Assembly: GCF_020745735.1 (NCBI RefSeq)
Contig: NC_083409.1
Location: 9,661,534-9,725,533 of the forward strand
Direction of reading: 5' to 3'
Length of the DNA stretch: 64,000 bases
From: Hemiscyllium ocellatum
Lineage: Eukaryota
Under the pieces are notes generated by a model. That model was given only the letters and a program-made list of their open reading frames with translations, had not been told where the DNA came from and did not search any database. Of the stretch, positions 3,880-50,925 are shown one piece after another. How positions within the stretch are numbered: the stretch's first letter is position 1; each line of letters begins with the position of its first letter. The position numbers were made by a program, and so were the translations under genes.

Positions 3880-4410
3880 AGATGAGTCGTATTGCGTGCA
3901 ATTCTGGTTTCCCTCCTATTGGAAAGATGTTGTGAAACTTGAAAGGGTTTAGAAAAGATTTACCAGGATGTTGCCAGGGTTGGAGGATCTGAGGACAGAG
4001 AGAGGTTAAGCAGGATAAATGGGTTCGGGCTGTTTTCCCTGGAGTGTCGAAAGCTGAGGCGTGACCTTCAAGAGTTTACAAATTCATGAGGGACAAAGTC
4101 TTTTCTGTGGGATGGGGGGAGTCCAGAACTAGAGGGCATAGGTTTAGGGTGAGAGGGGAAAGATATAAAAGAGACCTAAGGGGGAATGTTTTCACTCAGA
4201 GGGTGGTATCTGTATGGAATAAGCTGCCAGAGGAAGTGGTGGAGGCGAGTACAATTGCAACATTTAAAAGGCATCTGGATGGGTATATGAATAGGAGGGA
4301 TATGGGCCAGGTGTTGGCAGGTGGGACTAGTTTGGGTTGGGATATCTGGTCGGCATGGACGAGTTAGACTGGAGAGTCTGTTTCCGTGCTGTACATCCCT
4401 ATGACTCTAA
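3880..4410 (+). mobile_element. CR1-type LINE 3' fragment
   Basis: ORF 4086-4367 (RTRGHRFRVRGERYKRDLRGNVFTQRVVSVWNKLPEEVVEA) is the CR1 RT C-terminus. The fragment ends in the ctatgactct tail. Confidence 0.85.
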
Positions 4411-4569
4411 AAGCAATTTATGATGATCTAGTGGAAATAAAATCGTGCAACAATTTTGTGATTCTGCCTGGGGTTATCATTGTTCAATTGCCAGCTTTAC
4501 CTATTGCAGACTGTACTGTACTGAAGGTTAGACAGAAATGGGGGAATGTTGCTCATTGAAAGTGATTAA

Positions 4570-4623
4570 GTTAGACGGCTACAGAGATAAGTCTGGACAG
4601 TGGGACTATCTCAGTAGCTCTTT
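4570..4623 (+). mobile_element. Left half of a CR1 3' UTR interrupted by the R2 element
   Basis: gacagtgggactatctcagtagctcttt joined to 9228 onward (gtagccggaatcgacacaatgggttgaatggcctcattctgtactgtaaaattctatgatt) restores a CR1 3' end colinear with the uninterrupted copy at 50852-50925. Confidence 0.7.
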
Positions 4624-4780
4624 GGGGGATGTGACTACAGTGTTTTAAGGTTGTTGGTCTCCGACCGGTGCCTGGGTAGTCACCTTTGTGATCGTTTGTA
4701 CGTATTTTATCGATTACAAAGTAAGGTCGAACCTCCTCGTGGTTCCCCCGGTAACGACCTGGAAGAGGAAGCTTTTGACC
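4624..4780 (+). ncRNA. HDV-like (R2-type) ribozyme core at the element 5' end
   Basis: P1 GGGGGA(4624-29)/TCCCCC(4744-49). P3-L3 ACC-TCCTCGT-GGT (4731-43), the R2 signature. P1.1 CC/GG(4750-51). P2 5' strand (A)GGTCGA(4724-30) can pair with CGACCT(4755-60) or TTGACC(4775-80). J1/2 has two stems: gtgactac/gtagtcac and tttgtgatcg/cgattacaaa. The J4/2 strand is non-canonical. Confidence 0.7.
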
Positions 4781-4997
4781 GGGAGGCAATTTTAAATTGT
4801 CGAGTGGTTGTTTTAGTTTGGTTTGATCAGTGGTTTTAGCATCGATTTTATCCCTGGTTTTACCTGTACTATACGCCACTGGCAGTTTTATTGTTTCTCT
4901 CTGTCGTTTGAGCAATACTCAGACCTGGCCGGCGAATACGACCTCAGAAAAGATACGAGACGGCTGGTGACCATTCGGTCTAAATCAGAAACAAAAT

Positions 4998-7900
4998 TTG
5001 GCTGCGGCGATTATGGCCAATTCCAAAAATTCCGGTTGGGTGGGAGACCGGGTAAATAACTGCCCCACACGGTTGCTATTGGTGACACCATGCGCAAAAT
5101 GTGTTAGCCGAAAATGGACTGGACAATCCGTCTCGACACAGACGGAAGAGACTATAAGGATTATTCCGGCAAGGCTGTCCTCGGGCAGGCACGAGGAAGT
5201 CAGTAATATCGTCCAGAATGAGCAGGACGTAATTGGAAGAGAATGACTAGTAGAGGAGGCCCCTCTGCAGTCGAGTTCATTTAACAGCCAGACAATTTTT
5301 AATTCGAATTTTACTGGGCCATTTGATTTTAGTCGATGTGGAGAATCAGAGAGAGGCGAGGAGAGGGATGAAGGTAGGATAATCCACCCAATAATTAGGG
5401 ATAATGATAAAATAGAGGTAATAATTAAATACCCAGTAGATAATTTTAATTATAACTATTGTAATAACATTTATAATACTACGGGGAGGTTTAGGCAGCA
5501 TTTAAAGATATGTAAGGGAATTAAATCAGTTAGAGTTAGATGTAATAAATGTGAATGGGAAGGGAATTACCAAGCCGTAGCATGCCACTATCCTAAATGT
5601 TCTAAGAATGATAATGGTAATAATAATGAGATTGATAGTAATAACAGTAATAATAATGACCAAGGAGAGAGAGAGCAACCATACCAATGTGAATTATGTC
5701 CTTTAAACTTTAAGACAAGCAGAGGTTTGGGGCAACATGAATGACATGTTCATCCCATTTTAAGAAATGAGAAAAGGAAAAGAGGAAAGGTAGAGAGTAG
5801 GAATAAGATGGAGAATAAGGAGGGTAGTAAGAAAGGAATATGGTCTCAGGAAGAAGTGGAAATGCTGCAACAGTTAGAAGTAGAATTTAGTGGCTGTAAA
5901 AACATTAATAAAGCTACAGCTGAGAAATTAGGTTCTAAAAAGGCAAAACAAATTTCAGATAAGAAGAGGTTATTAAATAAGAAAGATAAAAGGCATGATG
6001 ACTGTAAAGGTATAGATCAAGAACTGGTTCTTAATATGAGTGATAGTGATGAAATGGATAATTGTGATCGGGAGATAGATAAGGTAGTAGAGGAAGAAAG
6101 ATTAAAGAGAAAGAGTGATCAAGAGAGTAATAATATTATGGATAGAGTAGACTATGAGAGCAAATCACTCATAGAATTACTTAAAATAGTAGAGGACGAT
6201 ATGGGAAAGAATAAAGGCATGAGTAAGGAATTTGAGAATATAATGAATATGATAAATTGGGAACGAATAAGGAGGTGGATAAAGGTAAGAAGGAGACTCA
6301 TTGTAAACAAACAGGTTTGAAGCAAAGGGATAGTGGATAAAGAATGAAAAGTAAGGAAAATAAGGCGAAGAGAAGGTATAGTAGAAAGAAAGGTAAATTT
6401 AAAGAAATGCAGGTCTTATATAAAACAAATACACAATACCTGGCTAGAACCCTAATGGGGGCTCCACTTAGATGTGAATGCCCCCTAAGTAATGAAGAAT
6501 TAGAATACTATAAAGAAAGATTAACTAACTCTAATGATAAAAATAATTTGAGAGGTTTTGCCAAATATAAAAGGCATGGGGAGGGATCGGAGGATGGGAC
6601 TCTGACAAGTCCTGTGACAGTAGAAGACGTGAATCATGCCATTAAGGCGTTGGACATAAAAACTGCTGCAGGGCTAGATAGGGTAACATTGAAAGGGATA
6701 GTGAAGATATTTAATAAAGATAATACAGTACTTCCTAGAATATATACTATTTGGTTGAAATCGGGTATAATACTGGATCAAATGAAATCAAGTAGAACTG
6801 TATTGATTCCCAAAGTGAGCGTTGAAGAAGGGTTGAAGGATATTAATTGGAGACCAATAACTATAGGGCCAATTATGCTCAGAATATTTACTAAAATTAT
6901 AGCCAGTAGATTAAGTAAAGTAATAAAGCTGAATAAAAGACAAAAGGGCTTTAAGGCTGGTGTAGCGGGTTGCGAGGAAAATATCAAAATCCTAGAAAAT
7001 ATTATTAATGGGGCTAAAAAGAATGAGAGAGATTTAGCGCTGGTTTTCGTGGATTTACCAAAAGCGTTTGACACATTGGGGCACAAATTAATTATAACAG
7101 CTCTTAAAAGACTCCAACTCCTGTCAATATTTATTAATTTGGTTGCAAATTTACACGATAACAATTTTATTCAAGTGGAAAGTTTTAAAACTAAAACAGG
7201 AAAGATTAAAATTTTAAGAGGGGTGAAGCAAGGTGATGCATTGTCGCCGATTCTTTCTAATATTGTAATGGACCCTCTGATTAGTACCATTGAAGAGAAG
7301 GAAAAAGGAATATTTTTAGGGATAGATAGGAAAAGCTATCACTGCGCAACATTAGCGTTTGCAGATGATATAGCATTAGTTAGTCAATCTTACGATGGCA
7401 TGGTGTATAATCTTAAACTTGTAGAAAAATTTTGTAAAAATGCGGGAATGGAGGTTAATATAAAGAAACGAAAGGGTTTTACTTATAAAAATAAGACAAT
7501 TATATATAATAAAATTAACAAAAAATTAAATGAAGGGAGCAGACAGTTTATAGAGCCAGGTACAGATAAACATTTAGGTGCTAAGATAGATCCGTGGATT
7601 GGCGTAAGCCAATCAAACTGGGAAAGCCAATTAGATATATGGTTAGGAAATTTAAAAAGATCCCCCTTAAAACCAGTTCAAAAAATAGAAATTTTAAAAA
7701 CATATTTTATTCCTAGACTATATTATTGCTTAGTTTTATCTGAAGTCTCTATTAATTATCTTAATAAATTAGATAATAAAATAAAAAGCGTAGTTAAAGA
7801 AATTTTACACCCTCCGCAATCCATCACAGATGGAGTATTATATGCCAAATCCCGTGATGGAGACCTTGCTTTAAATAGACTGTCAACCTTTATTCCAATC

Positions 7901-8855
7901 TCGATAATGAGGAAGTACGGGACGCTACAGAAATCTGAGGACGAAATCTTGCATGCATCATTTCGTTTCGAAGGTGACAGTGTGGCTGTAAAAATGTATA
8001 AGTTGAGTAAACTTAAAGTGATGGAAAATATCTGGAACCCGAACATTAATCGGCGATTGGGTGAAGAGGATACTATCAGGGAAAGGTAGTGAAGATGAGA
8101 TGGAAGAATTTAGCAGTATCAACTATGCTAATTGGAGGAGTACTGAGGTACAGAGATGGATGGCCCTCCCCTGTCAAGGAGCTGGGGTTCATTATTTTAA
8201 GAATGATAGTATATCCAATGGTTGGTTGACCAGAGTATAATATATGAAGACATCAAAAGTTATTAATTCGATTTTATTGAGAACAAATTTATATCCAACA
8301 AGAGCGTCAATGTCATATGGAAGGCCATGTAATATCAAGAATTGCAGAAGGTGTAATAATACGTTAGAAATGTTTGCGCACATCTCGGGGTGGTGCCCTT
8401 ATATTAAAAACATGAGGATCAAGAGGCATAATAGAATTGAAGAAGAATTAGTTAAGTACGTAAGGAAAAACGGGTGGACAGTTTATATAGAACCGAGAAT
8501 TAAAGATGAAGCTGGGAAACTTTGGATACCGGATCTAATCTTTAAAAGAGAACACCAGGTTGTTGTTGTGAATGTAACCATTAGAAGAGACCTTCAGATC
8601 AACTCGCTTGAATCAGCATGGGAAGAAAAGACAAACAAGTATAAACATCTAGGAAAAGAGCTAATGGACCTCATTGGTGGAGGAACGATATCCTTTTATG
8701 GTTTTGTGATTGAAGCCCGAGGGAAGTGGTTCGAAAAGAACACTGAGTTGATGAAAGACCTCGAGTTCTCGAAATTTAAATCTTTCGCACAGAATATCAC
8801 AACCCTTGTTTTGTCTTTGACCCTTGAACTTTTACGGATTTTTATGGACTCTTAA
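4998..8855 (+). pseudogene. R2 ORF (ZF3-ZF2-ZF1-Myb, reverse transcriptase, CCHC, restriction-like endonuclease), disrupted
   Basis: Translating across stops gives YCNNIYNTTGRFRQHLKIC (~5460), CNKCEWEGNYQAVACHYPKC (5541-5600), CELCPLNFKTSRGLGQHE*HVHP (5688-5756) and Myb WSQEEVEML. RT motifs: WRPITIG, QKGF, FVDLPKAFD, GVKQGDALSP, LAFADD. Then CRRCNNTLEMFAHISGWC, RHNRI, IPDLIF, KTNKY. Stops at 5244, 5742 and 8238; frameshifts near 6250-6345 and 8040-8090. Confidence 0.9.
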
Positions 8856-9227
8856 TTTCTCCCATTGACGTTATTTAATAATGTTTTAATAAGTTTTAGG
8901 TATTTTAATAGTTTTAATTAAGGATTTTAATACTTTTTGATGGTTTTATCAATAAAGGTTTAGTGTTTTAGATCACTTAGTTAAAAGGTAGTAGGTAGAT
9001 TGGGGTGTTAAAAATAAAGAGCACGCTTCACACAACAAGTGATGAGTGGCCGCCTAGTCTAACGGTTCATATGCCCAGCTCATCCCTTGCCTCGCTGAGA
9101 TTCTGATTTACAATGTATTTTGCCCTTCCCTTAAGATCTTTCCGGCTGTGGTTGCGTCGACAAGCGACGTTAAAATCTCGAAAAGGACACGATCCATCGC
9201 GTATGGTGAGTGCGTTTTTAAAAAAAA

Positions 9228-9294
9228 GTAGCCGGAATCGACACAATGGGTTGAATGGCCTCATTCTGTACTGTAAAATTCTATGATTCTATAA
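9228..9294 (+). mobile_element. Right half of the CR1 3' UTR and tail interrupted by R2
   Basis: gtagccgg..atgggttgaatggcctcattctgtactgtaaaattctatgattctat is the CR1 terminal motif; compare 50866-50925. Confidence 0.75.
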
Positions 9295-9509
9295 TTATGG
9301 ATGCTATATCTTTGTCACCACTGTCCAGGAAGGTGATATCAGGATGTATCCGTTATGAAATTACGGAGCTGATTATTCTGCATGTGCTGTGTGTTTTATG
9401 CTGCAAAGTTCCAACTTTATAAATTATTTCCCATGTTTCCAGGACTGGATCTGCAAAGAGCTGGAAATCTCTTACTGAGAGTGAAATATCCAAAGCCCCA
9501 TTACATTGT

Positions 9510-9832
9510 GGGCGGCACGGTGGCACAGTGGTTAGCACTGCTGCCTCACAGCACCTGAGACCCGGGTTCAATTCCCGACTCAGGTGACTGACTGTGTGGA
9601 GTTTGCACGTTCTCCCTGTGTCTGCGTGGGTTTCCTCCGGGTGCTCCGGTTTCCTCCCACAGTCCAAAGATGTGCGGGTCAGGTGAATTGGCCATGCTAA
9701 ATTGCCCGTAGTGTTAGGTAAGGGGTAAATGTAGGGGTATGGGTGGGTTTCGCTTCGGCGGGTCGGTGTGGACTTGTTGGGCCGAAGGGCCTGTTTCCAC
9801 ACTGTAAGTCTAATCTAATCTAAAAAAAAAAG
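9510..9832 (+). mobile_element. HE1-type shark SINE, full length
   Basis: tRNA-like head with A box (tggcacagtgg) and B box (gggttcaattccc), V-SINE core (gtggagtttgcacgttctccc) and a (taatc)n tail. Confidence 0.9.
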
Positions 9833-10309
9833 CAGGATATGTATGTGACACCACAAACTGTAGGGCTGGCTTCTTCACAACACCTATGTTGTTAAGGTAG
9901 TTCAGGATTGCAAAATTCCATAAAATGTTTACGAGTTGTTTAATAAATTGACTTTGTTTATTCAGCAGCAAACTACCAGCATTCAAAGCGGAAACTAACA
10001 TAAATAGACAGCTGATTTATCCGTTTTTTTTGTAATTCTGCAATTCTTCACGAACTGCTTTAGCTCAACATGTTCTCCCTTGTAGCTGGATTTTTTAATT
10101 TAGTTCACTATGTGACATCACTAAACCTTGTTTTTAAAGAATCTAAATAACATATTTCAAAAAGGCTTGTTCTTTGATGAAGAATGCACATTTTTTAGAA
10201 AGGTATAAAAATTGCATTCTCAAGTGCTTTCATTGCAAGATTATGTACAGTAAGTTCATGTCCCACTTCAGAGACCTGTGCTTTGTGAATCAGACTGATG
10301 CACCAGTGC

Positions 10310-48519: not shown

Positions 48520-50925
48520 AGAAGGCTGTCTAAGAATACAATGGAATCTTGACCAACTGGGCCAGTCAGCTGTGGACTGGCAGATGGAGTTTAATTCAGA
48601 TAAATGGGAGTGCTATATTTTGGTAAGACACAAGAGATGGGTGAGATCCTGAACAAATACTTTAGGTCAGTATATATTGTGGGGAAAGCTAGGGAATTTG
48701 GAAAAATAGTGATGTCTTGAAAAGAGAACACATCTAAATGAGGAGACGCTAAAGATCTTAAAACACATAAAGGTAGATAAACCCTAGGACCTGATCAGGT
48801 GTATCCCAGAACATTGTGGCAACTGGGGAAGAGATTTTTGGGACCCTTGCTGAGATATATGTATCATCGGTAACCATGGATAAGGTGCTGGAGAAACAGA
48901 GAGGTTGGCTAAGATTATGCCATTATTTCTGAAAGGAAAAGCAAGGGAACTATAGACCAGTGAGCCTGATGTCAGTGCTGGGTAAGATGTTGGAGTGGAT
49001 TCTGTGGGACAGGATTTACATCGTTTGGATAATCAGTGTGGCTTTGTGCATAGGAAATCATGTCTCCTGAATTTGATTCAGGAGGTGACCAAAAGAATTG
49101 ATGAAGACAGAACAGTAGACATTGTCAATATGGACTTCAGAGTAAAGTGTTTGACAAGGTTCCACATGATAGACTGGTTGTGAGGTTAGACCACATGGGA
49201 TCCAGGGGGAGCGAGCCATTGGAGTCAAAAAATTGGCTTGAAGATTGGAGGCAGAGAGTGTTGGGAAAAGGTTGCTTTTCAGACTGGAGATCTGTGAATA
49301 GCTGTGTGCCACAAGGAATGGTGCTGAGTCCACAAATGCTTTTCATCATTTAAAGAAATGATTTGGATGTGAATATAGGAGTTACGGTAAGTTTGTAAAT
49401 GACACCAAAATTGGTGGGACAGTGGATAGTGAAGAAGATTATCTCAGGGTACAGCGGGACCTTGATCAGATGGGGCAATGGGCAGAAGAGTGGCAAATGG
49501 AGTTCAGTTTAGATAAATGTGAGATGTTGCATTTTGGAAAGGCAAACCAGGGCAGGAGTTATACAGTTAATGGGAGGGCCCTGTGGAGTGTTGCTGAATA
49601 ACACACCTAGGGGTGAAGATGCAGGTACATTATTCCTTGAAAGTGGGGTCACAGGTAGACAGGGTGATGAAGAAGGTGTTTGGTTTGCTTGCTTTTGTTC
49701 ATCACTGCATTGAGTACAGGAGTTGGAACATAATGTTACAGCAGTACAGGAGATTGGTGAGGCCACTTTGGGAATGATGTGAACAATTCTATCATCCTGA
49801 GGTAGGAAGGATGTCGTTAAACTTAAAAAGCTGCAGAAAAGATTTACAAGGATGTGGCCAGGATTTGGAGGGTTTGAGCTGTCGGGAAAGGCTGAAGAAA
49901 CTGGGGCTATATTCCCTGCAGCATCTAAGGCCTTGGGATGACGTTATAGATGTTTATAAAACCATGAGGGGCATGAACTGAGTGTATATCCAAGGTCTTT
50001 TCCGTGGAAAAGGGATTCCAAAACAAGAGGACATAAGTTTAAGGCGAGAGGCAAAAGATTCAAAAGGGACCTGAGGGGTAACTTGTCACACAGAGGGTGG
50101 TGCGTGTCTGGATTGAGCTGCCAGAGAAAGTGTTGGAGGTGGTTACAATTACAGCATTTAAAACACATTGGGATGGGTACATGGATAGGCTGGTTTTCGA
50201 GAGATGGAAGCCAAATGCTGGCAAATGGGATGAGATCAGTTTAGGATATTTGGTTAGCATGGACAAGTTGGACTGAAAGGTCTGTTTCCACGCGGTATGA
50301 CTCTGTGACTATGAGTTGCTGGAAAAGCTGAGACTTCTTACCCTGAAGCGGAAGGTTCTGAGGAGTGACCTTGTAGAGGTTTGGAAAATCATGAGGGACA
50401 TAGATAATGTGAAGAATTCTGGAAGGAGGCGAATGTTTTGTAGCGATGGCAAAAATTGTTCCCAAAGATCATTCCAGGGATGAGGAACATCAGTTATGAA
50501 GTTTGATTGGAGAATTTGGGACTGTCTTCTTTGGAGAAGGCTGAGAGGAGATTTGTTCAAGGAATTCAGAGTCAGGAAGGGCCTGGACAGAGTAAATAGG
50601 GAGAAAATGTTCCCAATTAAGAAAGGATTCAGACCAAGAGACCACAGATCGAAAGCAATTGGGAAAAGTAACAAAAGTGAGATGGGGAACAACATTTTTA
50701 GCCAGTGAGTGGTTAAGGTGTGGAATGCACTGCCTGAGAGTGTGATGGAGGCAGCTTCAATTAAAACATTCCAAAGGGAATGAGAATGTTAGTTGAAAAG
50801 GAACACTGTGCAGGGTGGCAGGGAGAAGGCAGGAGAATGACGCTCAGTGAATTGCTCATTCAGAGAGCCGGTCCAGACAGGATGGGTGGAATGGTCTCTT
50901 TGTACACTGTAACAATTCTGTGATT
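48520..50925 (+). mobile_element. Nested and decayed CR1 ORF2 fragments and 3' ends
   Basis: RT motifs (GNYRPVSL, VDIVNMDF..FDKVPHDRL, VPQGMVLSP, DTKIGG). Two distinct 3' ends at ~50310 and ~50925. Confidence 0.8.

What the first reader, a model, noticed from the sequence alone, without database searches (positions are those of the whole stretch)
4570..9294. Full-length clade-A R2 retrotransposon inserted into a CR1 LINE 3' UTR at a 28S-like site rather than in rDNA
Seen: the ORF has the ZF3-ZF2(CCHC)-ZF1-Myb-RT-CCHC-RLE layout of vertebrate clade-A R2, and neither flank is rRNA. Joining the flanks gives ..ACAGTGGGACTATCTCAGTAGCTCTTT|AAAG-TAGCCGGAATCGACACAATGGGTTGAATGG... This is colinear with the intact CR1 3' end in this window at 50852-50925 (TTGCTCATTCAGAGAGCCGG..GACAGGATGGGTGGAATGG). 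There is no TSD and at most a few bases are lost. Known: R2 nicks 28S at ..ACGGCGGGAGTAACTATGACTCTCTTAAGG^TAGCC, typically without a TSD. The empty site matches this target in the upstream block (ACAGTGGGACTATCT vs ACGGCGGGAGTAACT, 11/15) and around the nick (CTCT-TTAAAG^TAGCC). Inference: either a 28S-specific R2 hit a near-cognate site, or an R2 lineage has switched to the very abundant CR1 3' UTR. The second case would be a site-specific retroelement parasitising another LINE, plausibly co-transcribed from CR1 and released by its own ribozyme.
Basis: partly seen in the sequence, partly recalled or inferred. Interest (0 to 1): 0.9.

Follow-up and report, generated by a model that had tools for sequence, protein, structure and literature searches.

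The report
Dead shark R2 element off target
This is a decayed but end-to-end copy of an R2 jumping gene, which normally lands only in ribosomal RNA genes, sitting in a stub of another repeat (CR1) at a spot that closely mimics its ribosomal target; it looks like a natural off-target hit, not a switch to a new target.

Summary
Window 4624-9227 (+) is an end-to-end lineage-A (three-zinc-finger) R2 element, and its two flanks are the two halves of a short 5'-truncated CR1 tail. There is no rRNA anywhere in the window.

The ORF is dead, with at least 3 in-frame stops and 2 frame changes.

The rebuilt empty site matches the 28S R2 target at 22 of 33 positions without gaps, in exact register (P about 5e-7). 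The matches fall where published R2Tg off-target insertions also match 28S.

The only other member of this lineage I could fetch is bamboo-shark locus L001. It sits in a different part of a CR1, again at a 28S-like site in register (17/26). So the protein appears to still read the 28S motif. A switch to CR1 as target is not supported, and this CR1 stub has no promoter.

New here:
- The first 27 nt of the element are an internalised, diverged copy of the 28S leader.
- That leader forms P1 of an HDV-like ribozyme, with compensatory changes relative to 28S-resident shark relatives. This follows the route modelled by Eickbush et al. 2013.

The scan has already noted at least 7 other R2 relics outside rDNA in this genome. 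I could not settle whether this lineage also lives in rDNA.

Verdict: a new member of a known kind, of moderate interest.

The parts
4500..4623 (+). Upstream half of the host: a 5'-truncated CR1-like LINE tail, ending ...CAGTAGCTCTTT. The start near 4500 is approximate.
   Evidence: Colinear with other CR1 tails of the window once the R2 is removed. Contigs of public runs join 4597-4625 to 9228-9271.
4624..9227 (+). The whole R2 element (lineage A), 4604 bp, from the ribozyme cut site to the A-run.
   Evidence: Five other contigs of the same species also begin their match exactly at 4624.
4624..4650 (+). Internalised, diverged copy of the 28S leader (28S positions -28..-1), ending TTAAGG.
   Evidence: 21 matches with 3 gaps to the genuine leader read in L002:71-98. 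None of 20000 shuffles and none of 59232 window 27-mers reaches this score. Alignment A1.
4624..4943 (+). HDV-like self-cleaving ribozyme fold. P1 is 4624-4629 with 4744-4749; P2 is 4725-4729 with 4939-4943; P3 is 4731-4733 with 4741-4743; L3 is 4734-4740; P1.1 is 4735-4736 with 4750-4751. There is a large P4 domain at about 4755-4932, and J4/2 carries the candidate catalytic C at 4933.
   Evidence: Core aligns with 28S-resident relatives L002 and L003. Compensatory double changes at P1 pairs 3 and 6, P3 pair 1 and leader stem 4633-4681. J1/2 folds with z = -4.45 and P4 with z = -2.7. No Rfam family matched. Cleavage was not tested.
4998..8855 (+). The single R2 ORF, now broken: stops at 5244, 5742 and 8238, and frame changes in 5975-6353 and 8032-8124.
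   Evidence: Other copies in the species read A at 5742 and C at 8238 and lack one base at 8082, so these defects are private to this copy.
5250..5741 (+). ZnF3-ZnF2(CCHC)-ZnF1. ZnF3 has lost its first Cys and last His in this copy.
   Evidence: Aligns to R2Tg 9dou residues 220-313, E = 2.5e-6.
5745..6000 (+). Myb DNA-binding domain.
   Evidence: Aligns to R2Tg residues 317-394, E = 2.6e-13.
6344..8089 (+). N-terminal extension, reverse transcriptase and thumb, in a different frame from the rest of the ORF.
   Evidence: Pfam RVT_1 5.7e-29. PDB lineage-A R2 chains at about 1e-105. Tree placement.
8130..8855 (+). Linker, CCHC zinc knuckle and restriction-like endonuclease, with a stop at 8238.
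8856..9227 (+). 3' UTR with the conserved block containing the GAAAAG hinge (9180-9185) and a terminal A8 (9220-9227).
   Evidence: Alignment with bamboo-shark copies L005 and L006. The hinge is the motif read by lineage-A R2 proteins (PMC12180492).
9228..9300 (+). Downstream half of the host CR1 tail, beginning G TAGCC GG. TAGCC equals 28S positions +1..+5.
   Evidence: 28S downstream sequence as printed in PMC12222951.

Best explanation
A lineage-A R2 non-LTR retrotransposon of a shark inserted once, by its own target-primed reverse transcription, into a near-cognate copy of its 28S target. That copy happened to lie in a short, 5'-truncated CR1 tail.

Inferred steps:
1. The R2 protein bound the 28S-like upstream block and nicked the bottom strand next to GG/TAGCC.
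2. The freed 3' end paired with the few 28S-type bases that follow the 3' UTR on the RNA, and primed cDNA synthesis.
3. The full RNA was copied up to its ribozyme-made 5' end (G4624).
4. The 5' junction closed on a GGG microhomology, without a target-site duplication.

The copy then decayed (stops and frame shifts) and is present in three sequenced samples of the species.

The element's first 27 nt are an old duplicate of the 28S leader that has become part of the element. It has co-evolved with the ribozyme, so self-cleavage now uses the element's own P1 rather than host 28S sequence.

Shown: the anatomy, the flanks, the register of the 28S match, the compensatory pairs and the decay. Inferred: the order of biochemical steps, ribozyme activity, and that the family's normal home is rDNA.
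For: - R2 lineage-A identity and domain order.
- No rRNA in the window.
- CR1 colinearity of the flanks.
- The empty site matches 28S -28..+5 at 22/33 ungapped, P = 5.5e-7; the window maximum elsewhere is 19.
- The matches sit at +1..+5 (5/5), at -25..-19 (6/7, including T at -20) and on the T/C-rich block -9..-5 (5/5). These are the three features of the R2Tg off-target logo (PMC12222951).
- L001, the bamboo-shark member of the same lineage (sister in the tree, support 100), is 5'-truncated inside a CR1 ORF2 segment. Its upstream flank matches 28S at 17/26 in register, P = 1.6e-5. About 2.6e-4 of random sites reach that identity.
- Relatives L002 and L003 sit in true 28S.
- Ribozyme and leader. 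The route to an internal leader is modelled in PMC3774820.
- Private ORF defects.
- Zero-difference contigs of this copy occur in runs from three samples; one from X5 bridges the 5' junction (4382-4655).
Against: - No 28S-flanked copy of this particular lineage was seen. Both members with readable junctions are ectopic.
- Five other full-length 5' ends in the species have non-28S upstream flanks.
- Earlier notes of the scan list at least 7 R2 relics outside rDNA in this genome.
- Assemblies and short contigs under-represent rDNA, so absence of 28S-flanked copies is weak evidence. Still, it leaves room for a lineage that lives outside rDNA.
- The exact pre-insertion sequence (GGG before TAGCC) is inferred from the element's first bases and from a repeated contig of a related species, not from an orthologous empty site.
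Confidence: 0.68

Rival explanations
1. The lineage (window + L001) no longer depends on rDNA. It carries its own 28S-derived leader and ribozyme, is transcribed by read-through from wherever it lies, and spreads among dispersed near-cognate sites. The very abundant CR1 repeats supply most of those sites.
For: - Every copy of the lineage with readable flanks is outside rDNA.
- Five more 5' ends have non-28S flanks.
- The ribozyme P1 pairs with the element's own leader and would have a central mismatch with true 28S.
- The lineage has a long separate branch and a deviant AT-rich ORF, GC 0.35 against 0.44 for the window.
- There are high-depth variants, including internally deleted ones.
- Several scan notes report ectopic R2 in this genome.
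Against: - An internal leader with compensatory P1 changes is the expected outcome for rDNA-resident R2 as well (PMC3774820).
- Summed depth suggests only about 8 copy-equivalents at 80% identity or more, and the copies are 10-20% apart, so there is no sign of a recent burst.
- rDNA copies would be poorly visible in the data I could reach.
- The upstream flank of the depth-87 contig is unknown and could be 28S.
Confidence: 0.2
2. The lineage has been retargeted to the CR1 3' UTR as a new specific site, parasitising CR1 and using CR1 transcription.
For: - This copy is in a CR1 tail in sense orientation.
- CR1 tails in general carry GGGAC...CTCTT...AGCC at R2-like spacing.
- L005 abuts a CR1 3' end.
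- One scan note reports another R2 splitting a CR1.
Against: - L001 lies in the ORF2 part of a CR1, not the tail.
- The five other 5' flanks agree with one another at only 0.51.
- The host CR1 piece is a promoterless stub.
- The site is better described by its likeness to 28S than by any CR1-specific feature.
- CR1 is so abundant in sharks that chance residence in CR1 is expected (my own knowledge, not measured here).
Confidence: 0.04
3. Endonuclease-independent capture: an R2 RNA with a short 28S tail primed on a random break that happened to end in ...GGCTA. The upstream 28S likeness would then be chance.
For: Only 4-5 nt of downstream homology are needed for priming (PMC12222951). L006 shows TAGC at its 3' junction, with no clear upstream match.
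Against: The upstream match, 15/25 in the exact register, has P = 2e-4 on its own. The same is seen independently in L001. There is no large deletion or rearrangement at the site.
Confidence: 0.04
4. The flanks are a decayed 28S fragment that moved together with the R2, not a CR1.
For: The site is 28S-like. One scan note describes an R2 with a 28S 3' flank outside rDNA.
Against: - No LSU rRNA match even at a lax threshold.
- Beyond +5 the downstream flank follows the CR1 tail for about 70 nt, and the upstream flank does so for about 100 nt.
- Hundreds of CR1 contigs cover the downstream flank.
Confidence: 0.02

Closest known systems
Vertebrate lineage-A (clade A) R2 elements, e.g. R2Tg (zebra finch) and PlaMe (turtle), and the shark R2s reported in Genome Biol 2026 (PMC13188248)
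   Same: ZnF3-ZnF2-ZnF1-Myb-RT-CCHC-RLE order. RT at about 35-37% identity over more than 500 residues. 3' UTR with the GAAAAG hinge. 5' HDV-like ribozyme. Insertion without a TSD next to ...GG/TAGCC.
   Different: This copy is not in 28S. The ORF is dead and unusually AT-rich. It belongs to a long-branched shark sub-lineage whose only other known member (L001) is also ectopic.
R2Tg off-target insertions in human cells (PMC12222951)
   Same: The site shares with 28S the same three features: 4-5 nt downstream homology, positions -19..-25 with T at -20, and a T/C-rich then T/A-rich block near -9.
   Different: This is a natural, germ-line, fixed event in a shark rather than an engineered donor. 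It is a single site, not a logo.
Eickbush, Burke and Eickbush 2013 model of 5' extension by 28S duplication and compensatory P1/P1' change (PMC3774820, Fig. 8 d-e; sea squirt R2-B/C, horseshoe crab, sow bug)
   Same: [quoted passage not shown] P1 is formed with the duplicate, and compensatory changes erode identity to 28S.
   Different: It is seen here in a vertebrate lineage-A element, at a more advanced stage (about 21/28 identity, three compensated core pairs). The rDNA-resident parent has not been observed.
Non-site-specific R2 families (R2NS-1_SMed, R2NS-1_CSi; PMC5035012) and sponge R2-homologous elements (PMC13188248)
   Same: R2-type proteins found outside rDNA.
   Different: Those families have flanks unlike 28S and many young copies. 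Here both analysable sites are 28S-like in exact register, and the copies are few and old.

Membership tests
R2 non-LTR retrotransposon, lineage/clade A | Single ORF with three N-terminal zinc fingers (ZnF3, CCHC-type ZnF2, ZnF1) followed by Myb | tested here: met
   Searches align 5250-6000 to R2Tg 220-394. ZnF3 ligands are mutated in this dead copy.
R2 non-LTR retrotransposon, lineage/clade A | RT domain grouping with R2, and with lineage A rather than D | tested here: met
   (1e-105 against 5e-49). One search places it in a fully supported (SH-aLRT 100) 9-row shark clade. That clade lies in a 20-row group (98) that also holds turtle PlaMe and teleost R2s and excludes the R2DM-like row.
R2 non-LTR retrotransposon, lineage/clade A | C-terminal CCHC zinc knuckle and restriction-like endonuclease | tested here: met
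   E = 2e-41 to chains 9nl3 and 9dou over residues 5-200 of the piece.
R2 non-LTR retrotransposon, lineage/clade A | 5' HDV-like self-cleaving ribozyme | tested here: met
   Fold read from alignment with 28S-resident relatives, with compensatory pairs. No Rfam model matched. Catalysis is not testable here.
R2 non-LTR retrotransposon, lineage/clade A | 3' UTR module with GAAAAG hinge recognised by the protein | tested here: met
   (GAAAAG at 9180-9185, conserved in L005 and L006). PMC12180492.
R2 non-LTR retrotransposon, lineage/clade A | Insertion at the canonical site of 28S rDNA | tested here: not met
   This copy has CR1 flanks and there is no rRNA in the window. The site is a 22/33 mimic of the target. 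Whether the family as a whole sits in 28S could not be tested.
   L001 lies in another part of a CR1. Five other 5' flanks are unlike one another. The sample is small and the 3' junctions of other copies were not obtained.
Non-site-specific R2 (R2NS type) | Many near-identical copies with flanks unrelated to 28S | tested here: inconclusive
   Flanks of the two analysable copies are 28S-like. Copies are 10-20% diverged. No full junction table was possible.

The most novel reading that the evidence does not exclude
A shark-specific branch of lineage-A R2 has left the rDNA. With its own internalised 28S leader and a co-evolved ribozyme, it can be processed out of any host transcript. It persists by hopping among dispersed near-cognate 28S mimics, most of them supplied by the huge CR1 population. 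That would be a site-specific element living on look-alike sites.
Probability: 0.2. Interest if true: 0.65.

Novelty: new member of a known kind. Interest (0 to 1): 0.4.

Why it matters
R2 proteins are being developed as tools for gene insertion into rDNA, so their natural off-target rules matter. This copy and its bamboo-shark relative are natural, germ-line off-target events. Their sites obey the same three sequence features as the experimental R2Tg off-target logo, and they show that an abundant repeat family can supply such look-alike sites.

The internalised, co-evolving 28S leader is a clear vertebrate example of a route for moving the ribozyme cut site that was proposed for invertebrate R2s.

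Together with the scan's other notes, it suggests that slowly evolving shark genomes keep an unusually rich fossil record of R2 escapes. That record could be mined to measure R2 specificity over evolutionary time.

Tried and rejected
- Rfam on 4000-10000 at E up to 1 found no HDV-type family, so the ribozyme had to be read from alignment with relatives.
- The first read-laying run was swamped by CR1 contigs.
- The second read-laying run kept only 13 nt of 3' flank, so 3' loose ends of other copies were not listed. Only the 5' ends were informative, and both read-laying runs are now used.
- Catshark loci for P0151 and P0152 returned no DNA.
- A search with the spurious 115-aa ORF that spans the 5' junction, meant to fish out short public contigs of other copies, found nothing.
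- A metagenome scan for the lineage-specific ribozyme core gave 65 stretches. None has any R2 protein similarity, so they are chance matches.
- BLAST of the element against the rest of the window found no second copy or fragment.
- I considered that the flanks might be decayed 28S. I rejected this.
- At first I thought P4 and the catalytic C were deleted in this copy. Alignment A1 showed instead a large P4 insertion with J4/2 and P2 intact further downstream.
Full report
**What is there**

Window 4624-9227 on the + strand is one R2-type non-LTR retrotransposon.
- The 581-aa open piece 6344-8089 carries Pfam RVT_1 (5.7e-29).
- It hits solved lineage-A R2 proteins: 9nl3 at 9e-106, R2Tg 9dou at 1.3e-105 and 9nl2 at 1.7e-99. 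Lineage-D R2Bm scores only 5e-49, and LINE-1 ORF2 about 1e-23.
- The piece 8244-8855 aligns to the CCHC knuckle and restriction-like endonuclease of the same chains (2e-41).
- 5250-5741 aligns to the three zinc fingers of R2Tg, and 5745 onward aligns to its Myb domain.
- In a quick ML tree, the RT sits in a fully supported shark clade. That clade lies within a larger supported group that also contains the turtle PlaMe element and teleost R2s. The RT's sister is the bamboo-shark protein P0001 (locus L001), on a long common branch.

**State of the copy**

The element is complete at both ends, but its ORF is dead.
- There are in-frame stops at 5244, 5742 and 8238.
- There is a change of frame between 5975 and 6353 and another between 8032 and 8124.
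- Contigs of public runs of the same species read A at 5742 and C at 8238 and lack one base at 8082. At least these defects are therefore private to this copy.
- The ORF has 35% G+C, against 44% for the window.
- Contigs with no differences from this copy occur in runs from three samples. One, from run X5, bridges the 5' junction (4382-4655). The insertion is therefore real and not an assembly artefact.

**The flanks**

- No rRNA family matches 4000-10000 at E up to 1.
- None reaches the gathering score anywhere in the window.
- With the R2 removed, 4500-4623 and 9228-9300 align colinearly with other CR1 tails of the window.
- Contigs from the species and from a related species join 4597-4625 directly to 9228-9271.
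- The host CR1 piece starts only about 120 nt upstream of the insertion, just after the 3' end of another CR1 at about 4410. It is a promoterless stub.
- There is no target-site duplication.

**The target site**

I took the genuine 28S leader from L002:71-98, a metagenome contig whose upstream flank is LSU rRNA by Rfam. I took the downstream TAGCC from the junction amplicon printed in PMC12222951.

The upstream flank, plus the three G that open the element, plus TAGCC at 9229-9233, matches 28S positions -28..+5 at 22 of 33 without gaps.
- The binomial P is 5.5e-7 per position. Four registers were tried.
- No other position of the window, on either strand, exceeds 19.
- A repeated contig of the related species reads CTCTTTGG joined to GTAGCC. 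This supports that register.

The matches are 5/5 at +1..+5, 6/7 at -25..-19 (including T at -20), and 5/5 on CTCTT at -9..-5. These are the three features reported for off-target insertions of R2Tg in human cells (PMC12222951). They lie where lineage-A proteins hold the upstream DNA (PMC12180492).

**A second case in the lineage**

L001 is from the bamboo shark assembly and is 72% identical in DNA over 2.4 kb. It is a 5'-truncated copy whose 3' part has been lost.
- Its upstream flank is a CR1 ORF2 segment ending CAGTCTCTTAA.
- That flank matches 28S at 17 of 26 in register, two bases short of the canonical junction (P = 1.6e-5).
- Only 2.6e-4 of random sites reach that identity in any of five registers.

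Two independent events, in two species and in two different parts of CR1, both landed at 28S mimics. This argues that the protein still reads the 28S motif. It also argues that CR1 matters only as an abundant source of look-alikes.

**The 5' end**

I aligned the window with two 28S-resident relatives and one ectopic one:
- L002;
- L003, a bamboo-shark contig with LSU rRNA upstream;
- L006, the ectopic copy.

The alignment shows two things.

First, 4624-4650 is a diverged copy of the 28-nt 28S leader that those relatives use as the 5' strand of ribozyme P1. There are 21 matches with 3 gaps, and no shuffle or window 27-mer does as well.

Second, the HDV-like core is intact:
- P1 is GGGGGA with TCCCCC.
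- P2 is GGTCG with CGACC.
- P3 is ACC with GGT.
- L3 and P1.1 are conserved.
- There is a large P4 insertion.
- J4/2 reads CGAATA before P2.

Relative to L002 and L003:
- P1 pair 3 changed from C-G to G-C.
- P1 pair 6 changed from G-C to A-T.
- P3 pair 1 changed from G-C to A-T.

In the leader stem, pair 4633-4681 is G-C where L002 and L006 have A-T (L003 is out of register at these columns).

The J1/2 region folds far better than shuffles (z = -4.45), and P4 somewhat better (z = -2.7).

Five other contigs of the species start their match exactly at 4624. The leader is therefore a family feature, and 4624 is the RNA 5' end.

This is the outcome modelled by Eickbush et al. 2013 for R2s that duplicate upstream 28S sequence and then compensate P1 and P1' (PMC3774820). 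L006 carries a nearly unaltered leader at an ectopic site, which shows the starting state.

**The 3' end**

The last 80 nt share a conserved block with L005 and L006. It includes the GAAAAG hinge, the motif read by lineage-A proteins. Both this copy and L006 end in an A-run followed by TAGC.

**What the evidence does not settle**

I could not obtain the junctions of the other copies.
- The five other 5' flanks agree with one another at only 0.51. They are not a common site and not a 28S consensus. However, one of them, a contig at about ten times single-copy depth, could still be rDNA.
- Summed depth suggests about eight copy-equivalents at 80% identity or more, including an internally deleted high-depth variant.
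- Earlier notes of this scan list at least seven R2 relics outside rDNA in this genome, one of them also splitting a CR1. I did not check those.
- Bamboo shark has further ectopic copies (L004, L005, L006) with no rRNA nearby.

A lineage that now lives outside rDNA remains possible; I give it about 0.2. A lineage retargeted to the CR1 tail is unlikely, at about 0.04.

**Verdict**

The element is a new member of a known kind. It has two instructive features: a natural off-target site that obeys the experimental logo, and an internalised, co-evolving 28S leader.

Noticed in passing
window 4086-4410: 3' end of a second CR1-like LINE, with an open C-terminal ORF2 remnant (93 aa), ending at about 4410 directly before the stub that hosts the R2.
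   Followed up: partly
window 9505-9600: tRNA-derived SINE-like head (GGCACGGTGGCACAGTGGTTAGC...GGGTTCAATTCCCG). Only its T-arm gave a weak tmRNA-model hit, and ARAGORN calls no tRNA.
   Followed up: partly
contig of run X9 (related species), joint 9212 to 4628: A head-to-tail R2-R2 junction with TAGTAAAAA between the 3' end of one copy and position 4628 of the next. It could be a tandem insertion or a template jump.
   Followed up: no
contigs of run X5, joints 7095-8121, 8357-8810, 8863-8943: A variant with three internal deletions at about ten times single-copy depth (depth 99). This may be an amplified non-autonomous derivative of the family. A 5' variant contig at depth 87 replaces 4750-4945 with 204 other letters.
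   Followed up: no
L006:6405-10710 (bamboo shark, 533-kb scaffold): Full-length R2 of another shark family at a non-rDNA site. It still carries an almost unaltered 28S leader (GGTGGGAGTAACTATGACTCTCTT) and is followed by TAGC. This is what a ribozyme cut at -28 predicts for an ectopic copy.
   Followed up: partly
L005:6930-6990: A 5'-truncated R2 copy begins directly after the (AATCT)n terminal repeat of a CR1. The 3' junction is lost in an assembly gap.
   Followed up: no
L002 (JGI metagenome 3300026616): A metagenome contig carries a shark-clade R2 inside genuine 28S, so it is host (elasmobranch-like) DNA in a metagenome.
   Followed up: partly
protein P0155: A protein labelled as coming from an Aeromonas veronii MAG is sister to the Astyanax R2 protein in the tree (support 98). 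It is probably fish host DNA binned into a bacterial MAG.
   Followed up: no
window 5250-8855: The R2 ORF is strongly AT-rich (35% G+C, with runs of Asn and Lys codons). The 28S-resident shark relatives do not look like this by eye; their G+C was not computed, but the tree tool flagged the window RT and P0001 for deviant composition and none of those relatives. The cause is unknown.
   Followed up: no
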